From Macrostomum hystrix (taxonomy: Eukaryota > Animalia > Platyhelminthes): a stretch of 64,000 bases of DNA. Below the pieces are notes generated by a model, which saw nothing but the letters and a program-made list of their open reading frames with translations, made no database searches and had not been told where the DNA came from. The stretch spans positions 124,001 through 188,000 of the forward strand of contig CATNEN010000012.1 of the NCBI GenBank assembly GCA_950097015.1, read 5' to 3'. Below are positions 6,511-29,300 of the stretch, piece by piece. The translations under genes were made by a program, and so were the position numbers. Each line of letters starts with the position of its first letter. Within the stretch, counting starts at the first letter, position 1.

Positions 6511-7191
6511 AGGATCGGCTGTGAATTGTCTAATGGAAAATAAAAGCTTATTAATGAAGCTGTCATTATCAGTGTCCAGTCTAGCTGCCCCAATTCACCG
6601 AAGAATTCAGACAGCGGCTTCTCAAAGTTCTCAAGTTCTTATCGTTAGAGATTCACAAAGTGACAAGGATTTGGTAGTGACAGCTTCATTACCTTCGCAG
6701 CTTCACGACTGGGATGAAGATATTTCCTAATTAATCAGCTGTCAGCTTCAGTTGGGAACTAAAAACGATTGCAACAACAGAAATTCTCGCAAACTTATCT
6801 ATTTGAACCGATTTCTAACCGCTTTAGCACAGTAAACCTAAAAAAATATAGTTTTGTTACACAGTAAACTAACACAGAAACTAAAAAAATATGTCGAATC
6901 ATTCTATCCAGATCCCATTGACCACCTGTATAATATGATTGACGTGTTAGCAATTGATTTGGGGAGTTTTTACAATTCACTGCACACTGCGTCAAAGCGA
7001 CACAAATCACATTGAGAATGCGATATTCGCCATTCTGTATGATTAGCTGCAGAAGCGAATTGGATGTGTGCCAGTGCCATACCTATCGCAGAATTTACAT
7101 TACATTACGTTGAACAGTTTCAGTGTCACGCTTGATACTAATGCAGCATTAAAATTAAAATTATTCAAGATACTGTCACTTCTAGGTACTG

Positions 7192-8688
7192 CTACAGAAA
7201 CAGAAAACAGAAAACAGAAAACAGAATACAAGATACAGAATACAGAATACAGAATACAGAATACAGATACAGAATACAGAATACAGAATACAGATACAGA
7301 ATACAGAATACAGATACAGAATGCAGATACAGAATGAAGATACAGAATACAGATACAGATACAGAATACAGATACAGAATACAGAATACAGAATACAGAT
7401 ACAGAATACAGAATACAGAATACAGATACAGAATACAGAATACAGAATACAGAATACAGATACAGAATACAGATACAGAATACAGAATACAGAATACAGA
7501 ATACAGAATACAGAATACAGATACAGAATACAGAATACAGAATACAGAATACAGATACAGAATACAGATACAGAATACAGAATACAGAATACAGAATACA
7601 GATACAGAATACAGATACAGAATAAAGAATGCAGATACAGAATACAGATACAGATACAGAATACAGATACATTTACAGAATACAGAATACAGATACAGAA
7701 TACAGAATACAGAATACAGATACAGAATACAGAATACAGAATACAGAATACAGATACAGAATACAGAATACAGAATACAGAATACAGATACAGAATACAG
7801 AATACAGAATACAGAATACAGATACAGAATACAGAATACAGAATACAGAATAAAGAATACAGATACAGAATGCAGATACAGAATACAGATACAGAATGCA
7901 GATACAGAATGCAGATACAGAATACAGATACAGAATACAGAATACAGAATACAGAATACAGATACAGAATACAGATACAGAATACAGAATACAGAATACA
8001 GATACAGAATACAGAATACAGAATACAGAATACAGAATACAGATACAGAATACAGATACAGAATAAAGAATGCAGATACAGAATACAGATACAGATACAG
8101 AATACAGATACAGAATACAGAATACAGAATACAGATACAGAATACAGAATACAGAATACAGATACAGAATACAGAATACAGAATACAGAATACAGATGCA
8201 GAATACAGAATACAGAATACAGAATACAGATACAGAATACAGAATACAGAATACAGATACAGAATGCAGATACAGAATGCAGATACAGAATACAGATACA
8301 GAATGCAGATACAGAATGCAGATACAGAATGCAGATACAGAATACAGAATGCAGATACAGAATACAGAATACAGAATAAAGAATGCAGATACAGAATGTA
8401 GATTCTGTAGATTGAGATACAGAATACAGACAGAATACAGATACAGAATACAGACAGAATACAGACAGAATACAGACAGAATACAGACAGAATACAGATA
8501 CAGAATGTAGATTCAGATACAGAATACAGACAGAATACAGACAGAATGCAGATACAGATACAGAATGTAGATTCAGATACAGAATACAGACAGAATACAG
8601 ACAGAATACAGACAGAATACAGAATACAGACAGAATACAGACAGAATACAGAATACAGACAGAATACAGAATACAGACAGAATACAGA
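7192..8688. repeat. Compound microsatellite (ACAGAAT)n/(ACAGAT)n
   Basis: Mixed 7- and 6-bp units; source of the YRIQNTE and SVFCIL pseudo-ORFs. Confidence 0.97.
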
Positions 8689-9253
8689 TGCAAATATTGG
8701 ACCAAGACTCCCGAGCAAAGCAGATGAGCCTTACCTGGCTGGCTGGGTTGCTAGGCAGTCTCAGTAGTCGGGATCCGAGCAGAGTGGCGGAGGAACTGTC
8801 GCGACAGTGGAGCTCCCTAGTTATGCAATTTCAGTTGGCCAATCAAAGGCTAGCTACCCGGACAGGGCCTTAAAAAGCTAAGAGCCAGGTCTTGACAGCG
8901 CCTGGGGCTGCTGAGTTGAGTCGATCGTTGGCCGTGGCAGGCCTGTAGTTGACGAACCATGATGAATGAATCAGAAAAAAATAAGAATTCTTTTTATTCT
9001 TGAAATTGCTTTGAGCAGTTTCAGTTTTTTAACAGACTTTATCAGTCAGAGACATGACATTGCAACTTTTGGACATAGATGGAGCTGCCTAGCTCACACG
9101 TTTTTAGCTGACGCAAATCTGTCAAAACAAGCCGGCTAATTTGAGTCGCCCGACAGAACAGTCGCTTGTTGCTGCTGCTGCTGTTGCTGTTAACTCTCTG
9201 CTCCTTCATCAGCGAATCTCCCCGTAAAACTGATTATCTCTCACGTCTACTAA

Positions 9254-11135
9254 ACATCTCCCTCTCCCACACACCTCCCTCTCCCACACACCTCCCTCTC
9301 CCACACACCTCCCTCTCTCACACACCTCCCTCTCCCACACACCTCCCTCTCTCACACATCTCCCTCTCTCACACATCTCCCTCTCCCACACACCTCCCTC
9401 TCCCACACACCTCCCTCTCTCACACACCTCCCTCTCCCACACACCTCCCTCTCTCACACACCTCCCTCTCCCACACATCTCCCTCTCTCACACATCTCCC
9501 TCTCCCACACACCTCCCTCTCCCACACATCTCCCTCTCTCACACACCTCCTCTCCCACACATCTCCCTCTCCCACACACCTCCCTCTCCCACACACCTCC
9601 CTCTCCCACACACCTCCCTCTCCCACACACCTCCCTCTCTCACACACCTCCCTCTCTCACACACCTCCCTCTCTCACACATCTCCCTCTCCCACACACCT
9701 CCCTCTCTCACACACCTCCCTCTCTCACACATCTCCCTCTCTCACACATCTCCCTCTCCCACACACCTCCCTCTCTCACACATCTCCCTCTCCCACACAC
9801 CTCCCTCTCCCACACACCTCCCTCTCTCACACACCTCCCTCTCCCACACACCTCCCTCTCTCACACACCTCCCTCTCTCACACATCTCCCTCTCCCACAC
9901 ACCTCCCTCTCTCACACATCTCCCTCTCCCCACACACCTCCCTCTCTCACACACCTCCCTCTCTCACACACCTCCCTCTCTCACACATCTCCCTCTCCCA
10001 CACACCTCCCTCTCCCACACATCTCCCTCTCTCACACACCTCCCTCTCTCACACATCTCCCTCTCCCACACACCTCCCTCTCTCACACACCTCCCTCTCT
10101 CACACATCTCCCTCTCCCACACACCTCCCTCTCTCACACACCTCCCTCTCTCACACATCTCCCTCTCTCACACATCTCCCTCTCCCACACACCTCCCTCT
10201 CTCACACATCTCCCTCTCCCACACACCTCCCTCTCCCACACACCTCCCTCTCTCACACACCTCCCTCTCCCACACACCTCCCTCTCTCACACACCTCCCT
10301 CTCTCACACATCTCCCTCTCCCACACACCTCCCTCTCTCACACATCTCCCTCTCCCACACACCTCCCTCTCCCACACACCTCCCTCTCTCACACACCTCC
10401 CTCTCCCACACATCTCCCTCTCCCACACACCTCCCTCTCTCACACATCTCCCTCTCCCACACATATCCCTCTCTCACACATCTCCCTCTCCCACACACCT
10501 CCCTCTCTCACACATCTCCCTCTCCCACACATCTCCCTCTCCCACACACCTCCCTCTCCCACACATCTCCCTCTCCCACACACCTCCCTCTCCCACACAT
10601 CTCCCTCTCCCACACACCTCCCTCTCCCACACATCTCCCTCTCCCACACACCTCCCTCTCCCACACACCTCCCTCTCTCACACATCTCCCTCTCCCACAC
10701 ATCTCCCTCTCTCACATCTTCCTCTCTCACATCTCCCTCAATCTCACATCTCCCTCTCACATCTCCCTCAATCTCACATCTCCCTCAATCTCACATCTCC
10801 CTCAATCTCACATCTCCCTCAATCTCACATCTCCCTCTCCCACACATCTCCCTCAATCTCACATCTCCCTCTCTCACATCTCCCTCTCCCACATCTCCCT
10901 CAATCTCACATCTCCCTCTCTCACATCTCCCTCAATCTCACATCTCTCTCTCACATCTCCCTCTCTCACACCTCCCTCTCTCACATCTCCCTCTCTCACA
11001 CCTCCCTCTCTCACACCTCCCTCTCTCACACCTCCCTCTCTCACATCTCCCTCTCTCACATCTCCCTCTCTCACACCTCCCTCTCTCACATCTCCCACTC
11101 TCACATCTCCCTCTCTCACATCTCCCTCTCACACA
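9254..11135. repeat. C/T-rich minisatellite, 17-bp unit CACACACCTCCCTCTC(T/C), grading into 15-bp CACATCTCCCTCTCT
   Basis: Direct periodicity; source of the 657-aa SHTPPSLTHL pseudo-ORF. Confidence 0.97.
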
Positions 11136-11814
11136 TTAGTCCCTCATCAGCACATATTGAGAACAATATTTTATTCTAAAAAGCATCTCATTATGGCATC
11201 ATGAATTCTGGCAGTGCCGAATCCTGAAATCGTGATATTTAAGCCAATATTTTCGTCGCTTTCAATCAACTGAATTGTTCGATTGCCTGCCAACTGGAAG
11301 CCAATCCGAGAACCGGTTCAGAACTAAAATCCGCAGCCAGATATCCAGTTGCCGCGCCTGAAATCCGAGTTACTTTGAAATCCCAAAACTAGAGGCGTCA
11401 GAAATCCCACCATTAGGATATAAATTTCCCCCATTCATTTTGTCTAGTCACGTTCCCGGCTTTCAATTCCCAGTTCGCGGCTGAGAACGCGTTCCCAGAA
11501 AATTCACGAGAATAGTAAAACAAAAAATAAAGAAAGATGAGAAGTGAAATGGGTTATTAGATTCCCATCAAACTTTGATAAGTTTTTTCTTACAGTGGAA
11601 AATGCGAGTAGTTGTTAAAGAGAATTTACTCAAATTGCGGAAATACCCCGGCGAAGCTGACAAACAATGGAAAAATCGCAAAGAATTCGGGCATTTAAAT
11701 ATAGATCAGCCACGATGGTTTGACGGTGCGTTTAAACACGCCACCAAATTACCGACACAGAGCAGAAACTGCTCTGCTCTATCCTGAGCCTCATTAACTA
11801 TTTCATACTACTAT

Positions 11815-12335
11815 ACCTCTCCGTATCGTCTCCATCTCCGTCTCCATCTCCTTCTCCGTCTCCGTCTCCATCTCCGTCTCCGTCTCCGTCTCCATCTCCG
11901 TCTCCGTCTCCGTCTCCGTCTCCGTCTCCGTCTCCGTCTTCGTCTCCGACTCCGTCTCCGTCACCGTCACCGTCTCCGTCTCCCTCTTCATCTCGCTCTC
12001 CCTCTCCCTCTTTATCTTCATCTCCGTCTCCGTCTCCGTCTCCGTCTCCGTCTCCGTCTCCGTCTCCGTCTCCGTCTCCGTCTCCGTCTCCGTCTCCGTC
12101 TCCGTCTCCGTCTCCGTCTCCGTCTCCGTCTCCGTCTCCGTCTCCGTCTCCGTCTCCGACTCCGTCTCCGTCTCCGTCTCCGTCTCCGTCTCCGTCTCCG
12201 TCTCCCTCTTCATCTCGCTCTCCCTCTCCCTCTTTATCTTCATCTCCGTCTCCGTCTCCGTCTCCGTCTCCGTCTCCGTCTCCGTCTCCCTCTTCATCTC
12301 ACTCTCCCTCTCACTCTTTATCTTCATCTCCGTCT
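11815..12335. repeat. Microsatellite (TCCGTC)n
   Basis: Hexamer array with interruptions. Confidence 0.96.
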
Positions 12336-15260: not shown

Positions 15261-18200
15261 ATGACGGTTCAGCTGCTCGGCCTGCTGCTTCTGGTGACCG
15301 CCGGGGCCGCCGAGCTCAACGTCTGGTTCGAGCGGCGCGTGCTGGAGACCGTGGTCTCCCAGATGCTGCTGAGCGCCAACAACCCCCTCCGACCCCGGTG
15401 CAAGCCTAAGAGTGAGGGACAGCCTGGCTCCTGACACCCGGGGCCCCGTGACTCCAAGCTCTCAGTTCCTAAGAATGTAACTGACCCTCAGTTCTCATCC
15501 CCTGAAATCCCTCTTACACCCTCAGTTCTCATCCCCTGAAATCCCTCTTACACCCTTAGTTCTCGCCTCCCTGAAATATCCCTGATATCCCCCTTACACC
15601 CTTAGTTCTCGTCTCCCTGAAATATCCCTGAAATACCCCTGAAATCCCCCTTACATCCTTAGTTCTCGCCTCCCTGAAATATCCCTGATATCCCCCTTAC
15701 ACCCTTAGTTCTCGCCTCCCTGAAATATCCCTGATATCCCCCTTACACCCTTAGTTCTCGTCTCCCTGAAATACCCCTGATATCCCCCTTACACCCTTAG
15801 TTCTCGTCTCCCTGAAATATCTCTGAAATACCCCTGAAATCCCCCTTACATCCTTAGTTCTCGCCTCCCTGAAATATCCCTGATATCCCCCTTACACCCT
15901 TAGTTCTCGTCTCCCTGAAATATCCCTGAAATACCCCTTACACCCTTAGTTCTCGCCTCCCTGAAATATCCCTGAAATCTCCCTGAATTATCTTTTAAAA
16001 AGACTCCATGTAATCTAACAGAAAGTATTTTAGTCTCCCTAAACCCATCTGTTTTCAGCTCTCTAAAATCTCCCAGAAGTCTCCCCACACTCTCAGTTCT
16101 CTGCAATCCTCTTCGCGCACGCTTAACTTACTTTCTAAGAAATCATGTCAGCCATCAGATTTAATTTGCCTGGTCCCTCATAATGATCATGCGTTCTCGC
16201 CTGATTTCTCTTCACCAAATCCACCTGACACCCTCCAGATGGCTTGGACCAGCTTCTGCACCGTCTAACAACGGACCGCTACCCAATTGTGGCTGACGGA
16301 CACCTTCTGTCCAACCTTTACTTCGACTCTTCGTCTGGCACAGGTGTGACTCTGGCCTTCGCTCTCAACAGCTTCACCCTGCACTGGTCCACAGCTGCCA
16401 GAGACGCACGGCTGCAGCCCGATAGGGTGAGTGAGGACTAAATTATTTACTCTCTCCCGGTTCCCTTTATCTGTTTTCTCCCTCTCTCTAACCTCCCTCT
16501 CTCTCTAACCTCCCTCTCTCTCTAACCTCCCTCTCTCTCTAACCTCCCTCTCTCTCTAACCTCCCTATCTCTCTAACCTCCCTCTCTCTCTATCCTCCTC
16601 TCTCTCTAACCTCCCTATCTCTCTAACCTCCCTCTCTCTCTATCCTCCTCTCTCTCTAACCTCCCTCTCTCTCTAACCTCCCTCTCTCTCTAACCTCCCT
16701 CTCTCTCTAACCTCCCTATCTCTCTAACCTCCCTCTCTCTCTATCCTCCTCTCTCTCTAACCTCCCTATCTCTCTAACCTACCTCTCTCTGTTATCTCCC
16801 TTTCTCCCAACTCCCTCTCCCACCTATTCCACCATGCTTCCCATCGGGTTCCGAGTTCAGCAATTTCACCGAACTAGACAAACTGATAGATAAATGCCTG
16901 TCCACAATGCCAGGTGCAGTACAAGTTCGTGAGTCTGCAGTCTTACAATACATCTGTGCTGCAGCACCCAAGGCTGGACATCGCTGATGAAGGATTTGTA
17001 CCAGTTGCCGAGACATGTGAGTCTGGAATCAGAGACATTGCCGAGACATGTCGCTCTTAAGCTACTATAAGTAGGCATGTTACCGATTTCAAAGATTGAT
17101 TTTCAGATCATTTAAAGAAATAATCCTCATTTGCGCCATCACCGAATTTGAGCAGCCTTCCAGTTGAGTCTGCAGTGCTCAAATCGCGTCAGCGGAGTTG
17201 CCGAATTCGAAATTCACGCCGTCTTCCAGTGGCCCGACCGGCCTGAAAAACGCTCACTGTCCATGCAGCACAAGTTCCGCAAGGCCTGCCTGGCAACCAG
17301 TGAGTCACTGCTGCTCAATTATAGTAGATACATGGTACACTCTGCACACACATTGTACACTCTGCGCACACATTGTACACTCTGCGCACACATTTTACAC
17401 TCTGCACACACATTGGACACTCTGCACACACATTGTACACTCTGCACACACATTGGACACTCTGCACACACATTGTACACTCTGCACACACATTGGACAC
17501 TCTGCACACACATTGGACACTCTGCACACACATTGGACACTCTGCGCACACATTGGACACTCTGCGCACACATAGGACACTCTGCACACACATTGGACAC
17601 TCTGCACACACATTGGACACTCTGCACACACATTTGACACTCTGCACACACATTGGACACTCTGCACACACATTGGACACTCTGCACACACATTGGACAC
17701 TCTGCACACACATTGGACACTCTGCACACACATTGTACACTCTGCACACACATTGTACACTCTGCACACACATTGGACACTCTGCACACACATTGGACAC
17801 TCTGCGCACACATTGGACACTCTGCGCACACATAGGACACTCTGCACACACATTGGACACTCTGCACACACATTTGACACTCTGCACACACATTGGACAC
17901 TCTGCACACACATTGGACACTCTGCGCACACATAGGACACTCTGCACACACATTGGACACTCTGCACACACATTGGACACTCTGCGCACACATTGGACAC
18001 TCTGCGCACACATTGGACACTCTGCGCACACATTGGACACTCTGCACACACATTGGACACTCTGCACACACATTGGACACTCTGCACACACATTGGACAC
18101 TCTGCACACACATTGGACACTCTGCACACACATTTGACACTCTGCACACACATTGGACACTCTGCACACACATTGGACACTCTGCGCACACATTGGACAC

Positions 18201-19081
18201 TCTGCGCACACATTGGACACTCTGCGCACACATTGGACACTCTGCACACACATTGGACACTCTGCACACACATTTGACACTCTGCCCACACATTGGACAC
18301 TCTGCACACACATTGGACACTCTGCGCACACATTGGACACTCTGCACACACATTGGACACTCTGCACGCACATTGGACACTCTGCACACACATTGGACAC
18401 TCTGCACACACATTGGACACTCTGCACACACATTGGACACTCTGCGCACACATTGGACACTCTGCGCACACATTGGACACTCTGCGCACACATTGGACAC
18501 TCTGCACACACATTGGACACTCTGCACACACATTGGACACTCTGCACACACATTGGACACTCTGCACACACATTGGACACTTAGTAGACACCCCGCTACT
18601 TAGTAGACACCCCGCTACTTAGTAGACACCCTGCTACTTAGTAGACACCCCGCTACTTAGTAGACACCCCGCTACTTAGTAGACACCCCGCCACTCAGTA
18701 ATTAGAAGACACCCGAACACTCATGATTGTCCAGATGACCTGCTGGAGCTGAAGCACAAGTGTCACTGCCGTAAGCTGTGTGAGCAACGGATTCGCCTCA
18801 AACAACGCCGGAATCGCCGTAAAAAGGACAGGCAAGCTTCCGAATTCTCTGCCGCCAAACCGACTTCATCGTCGACCATGGAGTCTCGACAGGAGAAGCG
18901 TCGACAGCGACGACTTCTAGAAAGAAATGGCGCCAAGACCATAAAGCGCCGTCTTCGGCAGCGTCGGCGTCGTGAACGTCGCCGCCGACTGCGCCGCCGC
19001 AGGAAGCAGTGCCAGGCGGAGTGTCGCCTGGAATGTCGCGCTAAGCCAAAGAGCTGTGATGACTCCCCGGCATCGCCCTGA
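15261..19081 (+). CDS. Secreted WIF-domain protein (~310 aa) with Cys-flanked poly-Arg C-terminal tail; no EGF repeats, TM segment or kinase
   Basis: Exons 15261-15411, 16239-16426, 16914-17016, 17156-17299, 18735-19081, all GT-AG and phase-compatible. Signal peptide MTVQLLGLLLLVTAGA; segments ELNVWFE, YPIVADGHL, LNSFTLHW, YKFVSLQS..HPRLDI..GFVP, FQLSLQC..SGVAEFEI, KFRKAC align in order with the WIF1/RYK WIF domain as recalled (SLYLWID, ILIVSEGKM, IHSMNFTW, YEFLSLRS..DPTVNV..GTVP, VQVGFPC..DGVAAFEV, IFFKTC). Confidence 0.8.
15480..15990. repeat. Intronic minisatellite, ~46-bp unit CCCTTAGTTCTCGCCTCCCTGAAATATCCCTGATATCCCCCTTACA
   Basis: Direct periodicity with longer variants; in intron 1 of the WIF gene. 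Confidence 0.92.
16478..16790. repeat. Intronic minisatellite, 17-bp unit CTCTCTCTCTAACCTCC
   Basis: Direct periodicity; in intron 2 of the WIF gene. Confidence 0.93.
17337..18580. repeat. Intronic minisatellite, 20-bp unit ACACTCTGCACACACATTGG, ~62 copies
   Basis: Highly homogeneous array; in intron 4 of the WIF gene. Confidence 0.98.
18580..18697. repeat. Minisatellite, 19-bp unit ACTTAGTAGACACCCCGCT
   Basis: About 6 copies abutting the 20-bp array. Confidence 0.92.
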
Positions 19082-20780
19082 CTGATCGCTGACTGATGAC
19101 CTGGATGAAAATAACTGGAAGAGCTCGAGGCCGTTACGCAACCGAGATCCATGAAATTCACTTTCTGAATTTATTTGGTCGCGTTTTTTCACCGATTAGT
19201 TAATAGAATTCGGGTCGTTTCAGAAACACGAAATTTCACAAACGAATTTTCGGATTTTTTTCAGTCTACAAAGTTTGTAAAGGCTGCCTCATCTCCAGTT
19301 CCTTTTATTGATTCAGAAACTTCACGAATTCGGAAGCGACCCTAAAAGTTATTCCCATGAAGAAACTATTTAAGGCATCAGGCAAGGTAGCTAATTTTGG
19401 TGTAGATATTTTTAGAATAATGCTTCGGCTGATTGGATTCATTCTGGAATAAAAATTTCTTGAGTTTATCAACTTAGTTTTTCTTTCTTTCTTTCTATCG
19501 GTACCTAGCCGATGATGAAAGGACAAAGGACGATTTAGCATGTGCTTTTGACATTGTTAACAAAACGCTTTAAAATACATAATCGATATAATAAAAATAA
19601 CAATGAAACATGTTTCCTAATGCTTTTGAAACAGTGCTTCGCAATTTGAGCATCAAAGCTTGATCGGCAACTATTACCAACTGAGCTTTATCTAAGCAGG
19701 GACTATACTCAAACATGCAAAGTTCTGAAGCTGTTTGATAACCAATACTTTCTTTAAGTGGCTAGTTAGGAAAACAACAATTACAGTGCAGGAGCACCTG
19801 AAAAAGCTCAGAAGCACCTGAAGAAGAATTGTGCTAGTTGTAATATTAAATTTTATAATGCAACAACTGCTTGGCGAAAGGATTTTACTCACTTGATCTA
19901 ATATATAGTAATCTGTGGGCTATATTTTTTGTCACCCAAAGGGTACGGGGTGCCTAATCTCATCCGCAATGCTAATTTGAACACTTCAAGCTCTGCACTA
20001 GAAACCGGTCTGCGTTCCTTCAGACAGGTAAACTGAGAAGGCAGTTGAGATAGAGAGCAATACTAGGTAGCTAATGGATAGGACAGGGTGAGTGCGTGTT
20101 TGTTCTCATCGGGGGTGGGTGCCGCTGTACGGGGCTACTCTTGCCTCTCAATTTGAAGGCCGAATTAAGTATAAATAGAACTCACAGAAGAGACAACTCC
20201 ACACTGGAGCGATAGAAGAGAAAACTTATAAGCACTGACTAATGCGAAGCAAATTATTAAGCTCTGGTGCTTTCCTGTCGCACAATTTCTCCCGTCTAAG
20301 AAATCATTGAGCGGATACAAAGAGGCGAAATGTCAGGGCTTTTCAGTGAGTTTGCCGCCTGATTTTGTGCAATTAGAGAGTTAATTAATCAATTCCCTTG
20401 TTTCTTTAATTTAGATATTGTCAACAGTTTCAGGCTATCACAATTCCAGATTTATTCAATTTTATTAGTTGCTCATTTTATTAGACATTTCTTAAAGTAC
20501 ATACTCGTACTCGTAAACATACTCGTATTTCTTAGAAATCCAGAGTTATTAGAATCCAGACTTATTCGTATGGACATTGATTTCCTAGAATTCAAGATTT
20601 CTAAAAAGTCAATGTTTTTTTAAATCCCAGATTTCTTAGAATTCTTTATTTCTTAGAATTCAAGGTTTTTTAATTCCAAATTTCTTAGAATTCCATATTT
20701 ATTAAAATTACGAATTTCTGATAAATCCAGGTTTCTTAGAATTCCAGATTTTTTTGGCGCGCCTAAATCTATCATTGCAG

Positions 20781-23700
20781 CTCGAAGGCCTAGTAAGCCC
20801 TGTTCGAATTGCGAAACGTTGGCGGCTAATGTGGAAGAGCTCAAGCAGACACTAAAGAAAAGTAATGGGCACTCTTTCGTATTTTTTTTACTCATTCGAT
20901 TAGGCTTAGTGTCTGAATTTAAGAGGGGCAGCCGCAGAGTGAAGGCCTGTTGTGTCGCCAAATGATAATAGGTCTGCGGCCTTAGTCAGCCAGAAAGAAT
21001 TTTTTAATTGTGTTTTTTTTTAGTAACACTTACATATTTTTAAAAAAATTCCAGCTTACGATGAGTTTCAAAAGAGTCAGACCGAGTTTAGACAACAGGT
21101 GAGTGAGTTGAATTGATTCTTTTCTTCGGGTGTGCTTTTAATCGACGATAAAAATCTACGATTGGTACTATTTACCAGCGGGGGGTCGGTGGCAGGGCGG
21201 TTAACGCGTTTGCCTCTCGCACCAAGGTCCCTGAGTTCGATTCCGCGGCGAGGCCACATTTATTTGGGGCGCAGCCGCGGAGAGAAGGCTTGGGGGCTTG
21301 TCGTGCAATTTACGCCATTGACGGCCAACCTCCAAGGCGCAGGGAAGTGTACACTGCCTGACGATGAGAAAGTCAGAGCGGATGTACACAGCTGTGTGAA
21401 CGTATGCCTGTGTACGTGTCTGTGTGCGTGTGTGCTCAGGAGTCAGCGGAATGGGCAGAATTGCCTCCTCACTGGCTGCGTGTCTAGTGTCACCAAATGA
21501 TGTGCCACTGCCCGCAGTTCTCCTGCAATTATTATTATTATATACAATTTACCTGCTGCCGTTGTGTCTTTCAGATTGAATCTATGAAGCTGGAATTAAA
21601 AGTGAAGCAGGCGGAGCTGAAGACCCGGGATCAGCGTGAGTAAACATTTTCAAGCAGTCGTTTGTCTATGACCGTAACCAGAAGTGAATAATGGGAATCC
21701 TTTTTACCCTAGTAGCTCACTATAATATGCTTCTAAGAAGCAAGGATTTATTGTTGCACGCTTCAACTGTCTATGGGTAAGAGGCTCCAGTGCCAGTCTG
21801 GCTCTAGTCTGAGTAAACAAAAGCCGACAGTACTCAGGGGGCTGGCTGCTCAGTTTAGGATCCTTGTTTAACTGAGCAGTATTCACAGGATGCTATCTAT
21901 CCATGCTGCTCTATTGTTCATTGGGCGAAGGTGAGTGAGTGATGGTCAACAATACTGAGGTGTGTTTGAGAATTGTTGCTCGAAGACAGATAGGAAAATG
22001 AATTCCGTATTCACATGCGTCTTTGCCACAAACAGAATAGCAAACTCTCTTTTGTGCGTGGCTGTGTATTGCTATTGCCTGGGACTGTGTTGAAGGCAGT
22101 AAGAAAACAAAAATAATATTCTATTTCATTTGAATTGTGTGAAACAGTGCAATATTAGGGATCCATTATCCACGGACCACTGTAGTAGAACTGTAGTATG
22201 ACTGTACTAGAATGGTCCTAACTATTAAAAGGGACATTTCAGCTTAAATTGACATTGCGACGTTGAATGTCAGCTTCAAGAGTGACATCGTGAGAGTAAA
22301 AGTCAGCATTGAGAGTGACATTGCGAGGGGGTGTCATTGTCGAGAGTAAATTGTGAGGGAAATGATAGTATTGAACATGCCGCATTCTTCACTTCCTCGC
22401 AGAGGCGGAGCTGGAGCGTGGCAGAGCAGCCGGGCTCAGGCAGCAGCTGAAAATCAGCCGCATCTACCAGCAGGTGGCGGTCAGCACGTGCGCAGATCTC
22501 GAGAGAGAGAAGCGGGAACTGCGCACCCGAAGCTGCATGATCGTGGACAAGTTGCTGTCCATGCCTGGCCAAGTCGGAGTCGCAGCCTCCGCTCTTGTCG
22601 ACTCTGGCGGCGTTGACGATGGTCTCCTATCCCCGTCTTTGATAAATGTCATTGAGGAGCTAATTGGCGACGATGACGCTGATCAGGACGACTGTTCACC
22701 GACCGGCGGCAATGAAAGCCCCGTGCGTCGACGCAAGCCGTCGCTCCCAACGGAGCCTCAACTGACTGAGCACATGCTGCAGGTGGTTCGACAGAGCTTC
22801 GTCGAGAACTGCCAGAGCAAGGAACCGAAGAGAAATAACAGAAATGAGGAGGAAGACGATAATTTCAGCCTTGAAGTTCCAACTAAGCAGCAGCAAGAGC
22901 AAGAACAAGATGAGGTCTATGAGGTCTTTGATCAAGAATCGCCGAAACCGAAGCCAACTCAATCGGAGTCTGAGCAGCAGCAGCTTCACCTAGAGGATGA
23001 AGAAAATGATGTCTATGAGGAAGCAGAAATCTCGTTGACTGAAGCGTCGCCGGAACCGAAGCCAAGGCTGTCGGAGTCACAGCAGCAGCAGCCAGAGGAA
23101 GAGCCGCAAAAGGAAGAACAAGATGAGGTATTTGAGAAAGCCGAAATCTCAGTGACTGAAGCGTCGCCGAAACCGAAGCCAAGGCTGTCGGAGTCACAGC
23201 AGCAGCAGCAGTCAAAGCCGCCGAAGCTACCAAAGCCAATTCTAAGACAGGCATCAAGGAGGCAGGCGGGCGGAGAACGCAAAGACCTCAGCCTGGTACC
23301 GGAGTCCGAAGAAGAGACGGACAGGCTGGGAGAGAATGAGGCGACTATCCACTTGGGCGAGGAAAATCAGGAAGAGAATGCAGACATCCGAATCGAGCTG
23401 GCAACCAACAATACAGAGCAGCTGGAAAATGTGAGCATGCTCCAAACTTTAATAATAATAGTAATAATAATAATAATTGCAGGAGGGCTGCGGGCAATGG
23501 CACATCATTTGGTGACACTAGACCCGCAACCAGCGAGGAGGCAATTCTGCCCATTCCGCTGACTGCTGAGCACACAAGCACACAGATACCGTACGCAGGC
23601 ACACGCTCACACAGGTGAATATATCCGCCCTGACTTTCTCATCGTCAGGCAGTGTGCACTTACCTGTGCCTTGGAGGTTGGCCGTCAAGGGCGTAAATTG

Positions 23701-24737
23701 CACGACAAGACCCCAAGCCTTCTCTCCGTGGCTGCGCCCCAAATAAATGTGGCCTCGCCGCGGAATCGAACCCAGGGACGTTGGGTGCGAGAGGCAAACG
23801 CGTTAACCGCCCTGCCACCGACCCCCTGCTTCAAGCCTTTTTCCGCGTAAACCCATATATGCATTCATGTTTTTGGTTTCCACGAAATACTTCCAGATTG
23901 GCACCATAGACGACATGCTAGAGGCTCTGCGTCAGGCTTCGCAGACGGCGATCCAACGTGAATGCGGCTGCGACAGACAGCTGGACCTAGCCGTGACTGC
24001 CTTGCTGCGGGTGAAGCGCGGTAAGCCTATAGATTGAGGCGGCGCAAACATGCTACCAATGCCTGCTTGTGCGCATCTGCTTGTTCTTTGTAACTCGAAA
24101 AAACCATATTATTTTGTAGACGCGGAGGAGCACAAACGGCAGCTCAGAGATCTTGATGACCAGATCAACGAGCTGAAAATCAAAGCCTCCCGTCCGCCGC
24201 CTCCGCCGATCGCACCGCCGCCGCCGCCGCCGCCGACGCCGCCGCCAACGCCGTCGTTCCTGAATAAATACAATATTGGAAAGAAAAATCGAAATCGTAA
24301 GCAGGATTTCTTTGAGTTGAGCTACTCTTACTCTTGGAGCTTGTTCTAATCCTATGCACTGTCACTGACCCCCGGGCAGTTCTATTCTATGAACCCCGCG
24401 ATTTTCTGTGAATAAATATTATTTACGATTTCATTGAATAGAAGCATTTTACTCAATACGCGCAGAGCTCGCCAAAGTCTCTTCCTTCGACGAAACTCTA
24501 ATCGAGAGCCTGAAAAACGAGCTGAAAGCGAAACTGAGCGGCGGCTGCAAGGTCCTCCGCCCGACTGTCCCGCGTCACACGCCGCCCTCCGCCGTCGCAA
24601 CCACCGCTGCCGCCGGCGGTGACTCCGAGGTTGACGAGCAGCTGAAGAAGCGAATGGCTAAGATCCGGCATCGGCTGTCGTCCTACCGGCCCGCTCCGGT
24701 GGATGAGCCGCGTGCCATCTTCATGGACCGACTCTAG
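20781..24737 (+). CDS. SHTN1: Shootin-1-like coiled-coil, polyproline and WH2-like protein; start exon not resolved
   Basis: Exons 20781-20861, 21055-21098, 21575-21635, 21889-21930, 22403-23430, 23897-24020, 24120-24296, 24466-24737 (phase-compatible). QLKISRIYQQVAVSTCADLEREKRELRTRSCMI resembles shootin LEIEKTCRESAEALATKLNKENKTLKRISML; coiled coil followed by PPPPPIAPPPPPPP and LKNELKAKLSGGCKVLRP (cf. MMDRIKKGVHLRP). Confidence 0.65.
21178..21542 (+). mobile_element. tRNA-derived SINE, copy 1 (full length)
   Basis: A-box-like TGGCAGGGCGG, B-box GAGTTCGATTCC, conserved body, (ATT)n tail, imperfect TSD TACTATTTACCAGC/TACAATTTACCTGC. Confidence 0.88.
23450..23826 (-). mobile_element. tRNA-derived SINE, copy 2 (full length)
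   Basis: Reverse complement of copy 1 with high identity, including the (AAT)n tail at the left end. Confidence 0.88.
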
Positions 24738-26317: not shown

Positions 26318-29300
26318 TCAAATTTTCTTCTTTCCTTTAAAAGACTTCGTGGCTTCTTTATTGTTCGCTTCCTCTCCCATCTCCTGCAACTTTGGTCGCC
26401 TGCCAACCTGAAAGTGCAGTAACAAGGCCGAGTCCTTGGCAACCAGTCGCATCATGTCCAAGGACAGGTAGGACCAGGCGTCTCGAGTCTCATTGAAGGC
26501 TGTGACCAAGCCGAAGCGAATGCTGGGCATGATGAGGCTGGCTTGACGTGCCAGTTGAAAGTCGACGCTGCCAGGCGAATAGACTGGCTTCTTCTGGCTA
26601 GAGTGGAAAAACCTCACCAACTGCTTGGCCTGCAACAGGGTGTGCAACAGGCAGTCAGTCAGGCGTTCAATTATAGCGGCGTGCTGATCTCGCCGACTTT
26701 CCAACACTTTGTGCACTTCGACGTGGGCGAATCGTCGCCTACCGGTGCGCACCCGCCGCAGCAGGGCGTCGATTGCGTCCTGCTCCCTGCAGGCCAAGTT
26801 CAGCAGGCAGTTCGCGATGTTGCGCTGGTCACGTGCTCTTCGGGAAAGCAACACTTGGTTTAATTAGCGTTTAACCTGGCTCAATTTTCCTAAATAGTTC
26901 CAAATTAGCTAATCTTATACTTTAAAACTGCGTGCCTGGTCAATGAAAATTAGGACTCGTGCCGCTCAGGATCCTCATTGGGATCTGTATAATCTCACAG
27001 TCAGGATCCTCATTGGGATCTGTATAATCTCACAGTCAGGATCCTCATTGGGATCTGTATAATCTCACAGTCAGGATCCTCATTGGGATCAGAAGACCCA
27101 GGACAGGTTGCGAACTACCAACCTGGGATCCTGAAGTTTCAGTTCTTCGGCATTGAAAAAGAATTTCGCCCGGATGTAGACTTCGAAAGCTTGGATGCAC
27201 TGCGCCAGACTGCGCTTTCGTTCCAATGCGAACAACAGAATGCGAAGCGGCTCTGAGCAATACCAGTCACTCACATTTAGCTTAGATTTCTTCCCACTCG
27301 AATTGGAGGCCTGCGAAAAAAAATTTTTTGACCTTTGCTTATTTGAACGCCAAGGCAAAGCCTAAAGGGATCTTGTAAGGGATTTCCTAGAAAGACCACG
27401 TGATATCTCAAATACCCAGAGGGTCGGTGACAGGGCGGTTAACGCGTTTGCCTCTCGCAATAAGGTCCCTGAGCTCGATTCCGCGGCGAGACCACATTCA
27501 TTTGGGGCGCAGCCGCGGAGAGAAGGCTTGGGGGCTTGTCGTGCAATTTACGCCCTTGAGGGCCAACCTCCAAGGCACAGTGAGAGTGTACACTGCCTGA
27601 CGATGAGAGAGATTGTGTCTGTGGCCACAGCCCTCCTGCCAAAAATAATATTATGAGTAATAATAATGAGAAGATGGTTCTGAGCACCCACACACACACC
27701 AGACACGTGCGCTGGAGCACATGGCAGAGTGCATCACTTCACTGGTGAACGAACTGTGGAAAATCACTCACTGGGCCTTCACCCGACTGCCTTACCCATC
27801 AGTGCATCGACGAACAATGGAACCTTTGCTAGAAGGTTGGACGCGATAATTGAAAATGATTCGAAAGGCAACCAGTCCTACTGAATCACCTGTTGAATCC
27901 TGGCGTTGTTATTCCGATTGTCCTTGGTCTTCGGATCCATCGCCGCCTGCATCATCAGCTGCGGATTGACGCCGTCGACCTCAGCTTGCCGTTTTAGCTC
28001 TTTCACAGCCTGCAATGTCACCTTCAGCTGCTTATATTGGTCATACTGGTCAGCCAGATCCAGTAGGTTGGGCACGCCAATCATCCGGAGATCCGGCGAC
28101 AGGTGCTCAACGTCGATTAGGCCGAAAGGCGTTGGCGTCGCGTTGTTCCGGTGAGAAATTACGAGCGACAAAGGCAGGCGAGAACTGCGATACTCTGTAG
28201 ACCCAATGACGCTGGCCACGAGCCGGTGGATGGGATAGAATGATCTGCTGGCCAGCATGTGCAGGGCAATGTCCAGCCAATCGCGGAAATACAACGCCCG
28301 ACGCTCGTATCGCCGTCTGATGGGCAGCGCCATCGCTTCACCAGACTGCCAGCCAGCTGCCAACAGAGGCGAAATCGCGGTGAAGAACTCGCGCCGAATC
28401 GCCACTAGGAAGGCTGGGAAGGCATGAAAGTCGCCGTCATTCAGGCTCATGATGTGGGAAGCGTACTGAACCTCGTTGGCATCTGCGATGCCCTGTCCGT
28501 CTGTCTCGGTCAGGCTTAGCAGCAGTTCAGTGACTTCCCTCTGGAACAGTGGGACATGAGAAATTCGAGATTATTTCAATTGCTTTTCAATGCTTTCGCA
28601 CTACTATGAGTAATAGATCTCTTATTGTGCAAGTATAAATTCTCAGATATCACGACAAAATTAGCGTTTGCTCACACTGCCCTGGAATTTCACGCACATG
28701 GGGTGTAAATACACTGCCCTGGAATTTCACGCACATGGGGTGTAAATACACTGCCCTGGAATTTCACGCACATGGGGTGTAAATACACTGCCCTGGAATT
28801 TCACGCACATGGGGTGTAAATACACTGCCCTGGAATTTCACGCACATGGGGTGTAAATACACTGCCCTGGAATTTCACGCACATGACCTTACATGTTAGC
28901 AGCGAATGGTTTGAATAGTTAAAAAAGCTCGATTGCATACTCACAGCTCTCATGTACAGACTGATGCCCAAAGCCGTGAGGTACAGCACGCACTTGCAGT
29001 GATACATAGGCGAGTCCATCTTGCCTTCCTTGAAGTACAACGCAGGATCGTCCAACACTTGAAAATATTTTCCGCGCAGGAAGTCTGGTGAGATTTCAAA
29101 TTTGCGTCGGACCGCATCGGAGTCGTTGGCCCGTATGCGGCTGATAAGCCAGAGGTTACTGGGATGCAGATGGTGCAGGAACCGGGGCACAGTGTAGTAG
29201 TAACAAGTGTTCAGTGAGTTCAGTGGGTCCAGAAACGCTGGTGGATTTGGTGCCTTGACCTTCTGTAAGCGCTCCTTCATGTTTTCATAACAAAAAATTG

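What the first reader, a model, noticed from the sequence alone, without database searches (positions are those of the whole stretch)
15261..19081. Secreted WIF-only protein whose EGF repeats are replaced by a Cys-stapled poly-arginine tail
Seen: signal peptide + WIF domain (with a ~30-aa insertion after the first strand), then a last exon encoding KCHCRKLC, a very basic stretch (RRNRRKK, RRLRQRRRRERRRRLRRRRK) and CQAECRLEC..C, ending at a stop. No TM or kinase exons follow before the next gene. Established: WIF domains bind Wnt (and affect Hedgehog movement via Drosophila Shifted); WIF1 uses EGF repeats to bind heparan sulfate; RYK has TM + kinase. Inference: a third architecture in which a polybasic, possibly disulfide-stapled helical hairpin (CxxxC pairs) tethers the protein to heparan sulfate, with furin-type RxRR sites that could release it. 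This would be a candidate Wnt/Hh gradient modulator.
Basis: partly seen in the sequence, partly recalled or inferred. Interest (0 to 1): 0.75.

Follow-up and report, generated by a model that had tools for sequence, protein, structure and literature searches.

The report
Flatworm WIF protein with Cys-braced poly-arginine tail
A Macrostomum flatworm gene encodes a small secreted protein in which a Wnt/Hedgehog-binding WIF domain is followed by a cysteine-braced, arginine-rich tail instead of the usual EGF repeats or receptor kinase; the architecture is real and conserved, but its function is untested.

Summary
Window 15261-19081 (+) is a five-exon gene with GT-AG introns full of minisatellites and a 933-nt in-frame CDS of about 310 aa.

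- **WIF domain:** Pfam WIF hits exons 3 and 4 in order. The M. lignano ortholog P0007 (307 aa) has the same residue count across all four exon junctions. A near-identical M. lignano model (P0001) scores 47 bits on Pfam WIF. P0007's model matches the human WIF-1 WIF domain (Foldseek E 3.6e-10).
- **Tail:** The last exon has two Cys clusters (C-x-C-x3-C and C-x3-C-x3-C-x6-C) around a 76-residue linker of net charge +29. All seven Cys are invariant in four genes: this gene, a short-linker paralog on contig C5, and the M. lignano ortholog of each.
- **What is absent:** I found no EGF, TM or kinase. The genome's three RYK-like genes lie elsewhere.
- **Untested ideas:** Heparan-sulfate tethering and furin release remain inference. 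If the Cys clusters are disulfide-linked, cleavage inside the loop would not free the WIF domain.
- **Novelty:** It is less new than claimed. Orthologs already sit in public databases as uncharacterised "WIF domain-containing protein". This scan had already reported what is probably the paralog, on other DNA (s1-328870). I found no paper describing the architecture.

The parts
15261..15411 (+). Exon 1: ATG, hydrophobic signal-like N-terminus (about residues 1-17), first WIF strand (L-N-V-W-F), a helix, and the start of the lineage-specific insertion with a conserved Cys (R-P-R-C-K-P). It ends in phase 1.
   Evidence: It is 66% identical to M. lignano P0007 and 48% to the C5 paralog exon 1.
15412..16238 (+). 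Intron 1 (827 nt, GTGAGG...CCAG), mostly a 46/103-bp minisatellite at 15484-15992.
16239..16426 (+). Exon 2: the rest of the insertion (an extra helix) and WIF strands up to the F-T-L-H-W motif.
   Evidence: 66% identical to P0007. The family profile hits it at 74 bits in the genome's own search. Pfam WIF does not reach it.
16914..17016 (+). Exon 3: the middle of the WIF domain (V-Q-Y-K-F...G-F-V-P).
   Evidence: Pfam WIF profile 56-85, 20.6 bits, E 4e-4. The V-Q-Y-K-F start matches P0007, which supports the acceptor at 16913/16914.
17156..17299 (+). Exon 4 (144 nt): the last WIF strands, with the conserved Cys pair (L-Q-C ... K-A-C-L).
   Evidence: Pfam WIF profile 90-131, 18.6 bits. It is 81% identical to P0007. 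The Cys residues align with the WIF-1 Cys pair.
17300..18734 (+). Intron 4 (1435 nt): a 20-bp unit x62 (17337-18581) followed by a 19-bp unit x6.4 (18579-18700).
18735..19081 (+). Exon 5: the whole C-terminal tail and the stop codon.
   Evidence: It is 51% identical to the P0007 tail and of the same length class.
18761..18781 (+). Cys cluster 1 (C-x-C-x3-C; tail residues 9-15).
   Evidence: Invariant K-C-x-C-R-x-x-C in all four genes compared.
18782..19009 (+). Polybasic linker: 76 residues, 28 R + 8 K against 7 D/E (net +29), with a Ser/Thr-rich spacer in the middle. All eight R-x-[KR]-R sites lie here.
   Evidence: The linker is 71 residues (net +39) in P0007, and 22 and 18 residues in the short paralogs.
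19010..19057 (+). Cys cluster 2 (C-x3-C-x3-C-x6-C; tail residues 92-107).
   Evidence: Invariant C-Q-x-x-C-x-x-x-C-R-x-x-P-x-x-C in all four genes.

Best explanation
Shown: this is an intact five-exon gene of a Macrostomum flatworm. It is one of a two-gene family in this genome, and each member has an ortholog in M. lignano.

The product of about 310 aa has three parts:
- a hydrophobic, signal-like N-terminus;
- a divergent WIF-1-type WIF domain with a roughly 28-residue insertion that carries one conserved Cys;
- a C-terminal module in which two invariant Cys clusters bracket an Arg/Lys-rich linker. The linker is long here (76 aa, net +29) and short in the paralog (18-22 aa).

Inferred: the protein is secreted. 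The WIF domain binds a lipid-modified morphogen (Wnt and/or Hedgehog), as WIF-1 and Shifted do. The two Cys clusters lie on antiparallel helices and are disulfide-bonded, closing the polybasic stretch into a loop or hairpin. That loop binds heparan sulfate or other polyanionic matrix, doing the job that EGF repeats II-V and glypicans do for WIF-1/Shifted. It would restrict the protein's range and concentrate it at cell surfaces.
For: - Gene model: GT-AG at all four introns and an in-frame 933-nt CDS. The M. lignano protein P0007 aligns with the same number of residues across each of the four exon junctions.
- WIF domain: Pfam hits on e3 and e4 are collinear. M. lignano models score 47.3 bits (P0001) and 45.9 bits (P0003). 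phmmer against PDB gives WIF-1 at E 1.3e-5.
- Fold: the six best Foldseek hits of the AF2 model of P0007 are all WIF domains. WIF-1 entries give E 3.6e-10 to 2.3e-8 and Drl-2 gives 4.2e-8, with target TM 0.46-0.68.
- Tail: seven Cys plus K8, R12, Q93, R101 and P104 are invariant across two paralogs in two species, while the linker keeps its charge but not its sequence. The family profile finds exactly two loci in the genome, each with all five exons in order.
- Tail shape: the tail-only AF2 model is helix 2-37, loop, helix 52-102 (pLDDT 72.5, pTM 0.51). VIA-align matches only generic two-helix hairpins.
- No EGF, TM or kinase.
- Background: PMC3285576 studies the role of glypicans in WIF-1 activity and the structural basis of its effects on Wnt and Hh (title and abstract only).
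Against: - No binding, secretion or expression data were obtained here.
- The N-terminal third of the WIF domain is not reached by the Pfam profile and is low-confidence in the model (pLDDT below 50 for residues 29-65 and 79-93), so the lipid pocket may not be intact.
- High pLDDT on Arg-rich helices is a common AlphaFold habit. Disulfide pairing cannot be read from the tools.
- Dense R-x-[KR]-R sites in a secretory protein may be cut by convertases, which would change the picture.
- A poly-Arg stretch could equally bind nucleic acid, phospholipid or acidic proteins.
Confidence: 0.5

Rival explanations
1. The tail is a pro-region. Proprotein convertases cut the many R-x-[KR]-R sites in the secretory pathway. 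The mature product is then either a two-chain, disulfide-held WIF protein or a free WIF domain plus Arg-rich peptides. Matrix tethering is not the tail's role.
For: There are eight R-x-[KR]-R sites in exon 5 and eight in the M. lignano ortholog, all between the Cys clusters. A Ser/Thr-rich spacer is predicted disordered (pLDDT below 50 at tail residues 44-48) and so is accessible.
Against: The short-linker M. lignano protein P0003 keeps the Cys clusters but has no such site in its tail. Cleavage is therefore not a family-wide feature. In a poly-Arg run these motifs arise by composition alone. The linker's net charge is conserved between species (+29 and +39), which suggests the charge itself is what is selected.
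Confidence: 0.2
2. The protein has left morphogen signalling. The WIF fold serves as a general lipid- or ligand-binding module, and the cationic Cys-braced hairpin acts like an alpha-hairpinin-type defence or adhesive peptide, for example in gland secretions, rather than as a Wnt/Hh modulator.
For: - The C-x3-C ... C-x3-C pattern on two predicted helices matches the alpha-hairpinin Cys motif, several members of which are Arg-rich (PMC7191063).
- The WIF domain is very divergent, with only its C-terminal 60% matching Pfam.
- So far the family is seen only in Macrostomum.
Against: The conserved WIF core, including its Cys pair, is still nearest to WIF-1. Alpha-hairpinins are peptides of 30-50 aa with four Cys, whereas this tail has seven Cys and hangs on a folded domain. 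[quoted passage not shown]
Confidence: 0.2
3. The locus is a mis-modelled or decaying gene: the true transcript uses other exons, or the copy is a pseudogene.
For: Several M. lignano database models of the same gene (P0001, P0004, P0005, P0009) are frameshifted or fused.
Against: The frame is open across all five exons with canonical splice sites. The best M. lignano model has the same residue count at every junction. All ten Cys are kept in four genes. No alternative coding exons lie downstream.
Confidence: 0.05

Closest known systems
WIF-1 (vertebrates) / Shifted (Drosophila): secreted WIF domain + five EGF repeats
   Same: It shares a signal-like N-terminus and an N-terminal WIF domain with the same fold and the same Cys pair. 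It has no membrane anchor. WIF-1 is its best sequence and structure match in PDB. The likely logic is also shared: a ligand-binding domain plus a matrix- or glypican-binding C-terminus.
   Different: It has no EGF repeats at all. In their place is a module of 57-115 residues with two Cys clusters and a polybasic linker. The WIF domain carries an insertion of about 28 residues with an extra Cys. A published survey found no Wif1 ortholog in platyhelminths (PMC7565927).
RYK / Derailed / LIN-18: WIF domain + TM + (pseudo)kinase
   Same: WIF fold (Drl-2 entry 7me5, Foldseek E 4.2e-8).
   Different: It has no TM or kinase. The sequence match to Drl-2 is much weaker than to WIF-1 (13.6 against 28 bits). 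The genome's three RYK-like genes are separate loci (C38:1.46 Mb, C38:19.99 Mb, C29:8.51 Mb) and show no close similarity to this gene's exons.
M. lignano BOX15_Mlig015645g2 (P0007) and BOX15_Mlig030313g1 (P0003), deposited as hypothetical / 'WIF domain-containing protein'
   Same: They are direct orthologs of this gene and of its C5 paralog. They share the same exon-junction positions, the same ten Cys and the same tail module.
   Different: They come from a different species: identity to P0007 is 51-81% per exon for four exons, and e3 (59%) was scored with a wrong first residue. They are uncharacterised, and I found no paper that mentions this architecture.
Alpha-hairpinins and other twin C-x3-C helical hairpins
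   Same: C-x3-C motifs on two predicted antiparallel helices, often in an Arg-rich context (PMC7191063).
   Different: Alpha-hairpinins are free plant peptides with four Cys and a short loop. This tail has seven Cys, a loop of 18-76 residues, and is fused to a WIF domain. There is no sequence or specific structural match. The resemblance is a lead only.

Membership tests
WIF domain (Pfam PF02019) | Profile match above the 25-bit gathering score | tested here: met
   Full-length M. lignano models score 47.3 bits (P0001) and 45.9 bits (P0003). In the window, e3 scores 20.6 bits and e4 18.6 bits. They are collinear on profile positions 56-85 and 90-131, but each is below the cut-off alone. The joined protein was not scored, by rule.
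WIF domain (Pfam PF02019) | WIF beta-sandwich fold | tested here: met
   In the AF2 model of ortholog P0007, the six best Foldseek hits are WIF-1 and Drl-2 WIF domains (E 3.6e-10 to 4.2e-8, 184-194 aligned columns). Model confidence is only moderate, at pLDDT 62-74 in the core.
WIF domain (Pfam PF02019) | Conserved Cys pair in the last two strands | tested here: met
   The phmmer alignment to 2d3j places both Cys opposite the WIF-1 Cys. They are invariant in the family.
WIF domain (Pfam PF02019) | N-terminal third of the domain (profile positions 1-53) | tested here: inconclusive
   There is no profile match on e1 or e2. An insertion is present and the model has pLDDT below 50 there. Only the L-N-V-W and F-x-x-x-W motifs are recognisable by eye.
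WIF-1 / Shifted | Five EGF repeats after the WIF domain | tested here: not met
   No EGF hit appears on exon 5 or on P0007/P0003 at E up to 1-10. The Cys spacing does not fit an EGF.
WIF-1 / Shifted | Binds Wnt and/or Hedgehog | not testable with these tools
   Needs a binding assay.
RYK / Derailed | Transmembrane helix and kinase domain after the WIF domain | tested here: not met
   The stop codon is at 19079-19081. The tail has no hydrophobic stretch and there is no domain on downstream ORFs. The orthologs end at the same place.
Alpha-hairpinin-like Cys-stapled helical hairpin | C-x3-C ... C-x3-C motif | tested here: met
   Tail C11-x3-C15 and C92-x3-C96-x3-C100, invariant.
Alpha-hairpinin-like Cys-stapled helical hairpin | Helix-loop-helix with the two motifs facing each other | tested here: inconclusive
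   AF2 gives two helices through both clusters and generic hairpin matches at Z 5.8 or less. Coordinates and Cys-Cys distances were not available. The arm lengths are unequal: 22 residues from C15 to the loop, 40 from the loop to C92.
Alpha-hairpinin-like Cys-stapled helical hairpin | C1-C4 / C2-C3 disulfides; four Cys; a free peptide of 30-50 aa | not testable with these tools
   Disulfide mapping is needed. The Cys count (seven) and the size already differ.

The most novel reading that the evidence does not exclude
Flatworms did not lose WIF-1 but rebuilt it. The EGF/glypican-binding half was replaced by a disulfide-closed polyarginine loop that binds heparan sulfate directly. The long-loop and short-loop paralogs would then set different diffusion ranges for a Wnt or Hedgehog carrier or trap. 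This would be an independent, minimal solution to morphogen-range control.
Probability: 0.25. Interest if true: 0.65.

Novelty: new variant of a known kind. Interest (0 to 1): 0.5.

Why it matters
WIF domains are known in two architectures: WIF-1/Shifted with EGF repeats, and RYK with a TM helix and kinase. A conserved third one has a compact Cys-braced polybasic module where the heparan-sulfate/glypican-binding EGF repeats normally sit.

If confirmed, it would do three things:
- It would help reconcile a survey that found no Wif1 ortholog in platyhelminths (PMC7565927) with reports of WIF in several flatworms (PMC11805424).
- It would give a natural test of whether matrix tethering alone is what the EGF half contributes.
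- It would add a candidate extracellular Wnt/Hh modulator to Macrostomum, a transgenic regeneration model. The Wnt-system survey of flatworms I found does not cover WIF proteins (bioRxiv 10.64898/2026.07.29.741434).

The value is limited because function is wholly untested and the family is so far seen in one genus.

Tried and rejected
- **Word search, exon 5:** no hits. The length window of 63-200 aa excludes full-length kin, so this says little.
- **Genome search, exon 5 as a single protein:** it missed the C5 paralog. The paralog appeared only through the WIF profile hit, a Cys/basic ORF scan, and later the family profile.
- **Big HMM search with a 47-position exon-4 profile:** six hits. 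Five are M. lignano WIF-tail models and the sixth, weakest one (P0006, E 6e-5) was not traced to a source. Vertebrate WIF-1 was not recovered either, so absence outside Macrostomum is not shown.
- **Word searches with P0001 and P0003:** M. lignano only. Poly-Arg words probably dominated the 8000 candidates scored.
- **ESM Atlas on the tail:** no usable hit.
- **Foldseek and VIA-align on the tail model:** only generic helical hairpins.
- **EGF remnant:** rejected, because the spacing C-x-C-x3-C lacks the 8-13 residues after C-x-C.
- **Antisense ORF 18763-19161 (-):** rejected as the coding frame, because the + frame is the one conserved with M. lignano.
- **Slippage-generated CGN repeat:** rejected (no TRF array, mixed Arg codons).
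- **dN/dS against M. lignano and an RNA check:** Paralog dN/dS was not attempted because at 45-50% identity silent sites are saturated.
- Full-length analyses used the database ortholog P0007 instead.
Full report
**Organism and setting.** The window is C12:124001-188000 of a 220-Mb, 42-contig assembly. Earlier notes of this scan call the genome Macrostomum. I checked this. The five hits that align over the whole gene are M. lignano proteins, at 51-81% identity per exon for four exons (e3 was scored with a wrong first residue). So this is a different Macrostomum species. Published assemblies exist for M. hystrix and M. cliftonense (Wiberg et al. 2023, cited in bioRxiv 10.64898/2026.07.29.741434). 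I did not determine which species this is.

**The gene model.**
- Reading the sequence, translating each exon by reference and checking splice sites gives five exons: 15261-15411, 16239-16426, 16914-17016, 17156-17299 and 18735-19081.
- All four introns start GTGAG and end CAG. The exon lengths sum to 933 nt, in frame, for about 310 aa.
- The introns are largely minisatellites: a 46/103-bp unit in intron 1, a 17-bp unit in intron 2, and a 20-bp unit x62 plus a 19-bp unit x6 in intron 4. Exon 5 contains no tandem repeat.
- The model rests instead on M. lignano protein P0007 (307 aa, BOX15_Mlig015645g2), returned by the database search. Each window exon aligns to it separately, and the number of residues across each of the four junctions is the same.

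**WIF domain.**
- Pfam WIF hits exon 3 (profile 56-85, 20.6 bits) and exon 4 (profile 90-131, 18.6 bits), in order.
- Full-length M. lignano models reach 47.3 bits (P0001) and 45.9 bits (P0003), against a 25-bit cut-off.
- phmmer of P0007 against PDB finds human WIF-1 (2d3j, E 1.3e-5, 28 bits) well ahead of Drosophila Drl-2 (7me5, E 0.32, 13.6 bits). Both domain Cys align to the WIF-1 Cys.
- An AlphaFold2 model of P0007 was made with a shallow alignment of family members and single window exons as separate rows. Mean pLDDT is 63.9, and 62-74 in the domain core.
- The six best Foldseek hits of that model are all WIF-domain structures, with E 3.6e-10 to 4.2e-8.
- Exons 1-2 are not reached by the Pfam profile. 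In P0001, profile position 54 maps to residue 102, which leaves about 28 extra residues after the first strand. The insertion holds a Cys conserved in all family members.

**The tail.**
- Exon 5 encodes 114 residues with 44 R+K and 13 D+E.
- There are seven Cys in two clusters: C-x-C-x3-C at tail residues 9-15, and C-x3-C-x3-C-x6-C at residues 92-107.
- The 76-residue linker between them has net charge +29 and a Ser/Thr-rich spacer in the middle.
- Aligning this tail with those of P0007, P0003 and the C5 paralog shows all seven Cys, K8, R12, Q93, R101 and P104 invariant.
- The linker keeps its charge (+29 and +39 in the long form, +10 and +12 in the short form) but not its sequence: 28 of 61 positions are identical between species.
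- With the WIF pair and the insertion Cys, the mature protein has ten Cys in every member. One tail Cys may therefore bond to the insertion. This is inference.
- A tail-only AlphaFold2 model gives helix 2-37, a disordered spacer, and helix 52-102 (pLDDT 72.5, pTM 0.51). Searches find only generic two-helix hairpins (Z 5.8 or less).
- So 'helical hairpin' is plausible but not established, and disulfide pairing is untestable here.

**Family and genome context.**
- The Pfam WIF search of the whole genome finds five loci.
- Three have a TM segment and kinase motifs downstream and are RYK-like: C38:1.46 Mb, C38:19.99 Mb and C29:8.51 Mb.
- The other two are this gene and a paralog on C5:2.50 Mb (minus strand). 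The paralog has the same five-exon layout, 45-53% identity in exons 1, 3 and 4, identical Cys spacing, and a 22-residue linker.
- A profile of the family finds exactly these two loci, each with all exons in order.
- No WIF gene with EGF repeats turned up. That search gives a lower bound only.
- The C5 gene is probably the one this scan reported earlier (s1-328870). The architecture has therefore been found before in this scan, on other DNA.

**What is absent.** No EGF, TM or kinase is found in exon 5 or in the orthologs. The orthologs end at the same point. ORFs between the stop and the next gene (an acidic repeat ORF from 22474) have no Pfam domain.

**Mechanism.**
- Shown: the architecture and its conservation.
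- Inferred: secretion, from the hydrophobic N-terminus only.
- Inferred: binding of lipid-modified Wnt or Hh by the WIF domain, by analogy with WIF-1/Shifted (abstracts of PMC3285576 and PMC8699845).
- Inferred: disulfide closure of the polybasic loop.
- Inferred: binding of that loop to heparan sulfate, in place of the EGF repeats.
- Furin 'release' is weak as proposed. All eight R-x-[KR]-R sites lie inside the Cys-bracketed loop, so cleavage would leave the halves tied if the clusters are bonded. The tail of M. lignano's short-linker protein P0003 has none.

**Literature.**
- One survey found no Wif1 ortholog in platyhelminths (PMC7565927).
- Another paper states WIF is present in several flatworms (PMC11805424).
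- The flatworm Wnt-system survey I found, which used Macrostomum genomes, does not mention WIF or RYK.
- I found no description of this tail.

**Limits.**
- The protein searches were sensitive only to close kin. Even vertebrate WIF-1 was not recovered by the 47-position profile. Restriction to Macrostomum is therefore not shown.

**Verdict.** It is a new variant of a known kind. Orthologs are already deposited but uncharacterised, and the scan has seen the paralog before.

Noticed in passing
window 21132-21500 (+), 23518-23850, 27400-27720; also L016, L020, L021, L022: A dispersed repeat carries the same ORF-like peptide (…[18 protein letters not shown]…, then CTLPDDEKVRADVH). It recurs in this window and near the other WIF loci, and is probably a transposable or SINE-like element.
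   Followed up: no
G000 C38:1456000-1475999 (L015/L019), C38:19989000-20008999 (L016/L020), C29:8510000-8529999 (L017/L021): There are three separate RYK-like genes, each with WIF exons followed by a TM segment and kinase motifs. No canonical WIF+EGF gene appeared among the genome's WIF hits.
   Followed up: partly
M. lignano protein P0008 against window exon 4 (17156-17299): A database model lacks exactly exon 4 (144 nt, in frame), which would remove the last WIF strands and the Cys pair. It is either an exon-skipping isoform or a prediction artefact.
   Followed up: no
M. lignano proteins P0001, P0002, P0004, P0005, P0009: Several deposited models of the two family genes are frameshifted, truncated or fused to neighbours. 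Some carry misleading automatic names ('ZP domain', 'Velvet domain', 'C2H2-type').
   Followed up: partly
window 15484-15992, 16482-16819, 17337-18700; L022 3754-6535: The introns of both paralogs are packed with long minisatellite arrays. One is 62 copies of a 20-bp unit, and the C5 gene has an array of about 2.8 kb. The arrays differ between the paralogs.
   Followed up: no
window 22474-23562 (+): A 362-aa open frame is rich in Glu, Gln and Pro, with repeated 'SPKPKPRLSESQQQQ'-like units and no Pfam match. It is the next gene downstream.
   Followed up: no
window 7182-12327: About 5 kb of strongly strand-biased simple or tandem repeats (GC skew down to -0.72) lies upstream of the gene, giving long spurious ORFs on both strands.
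   Followed up: no
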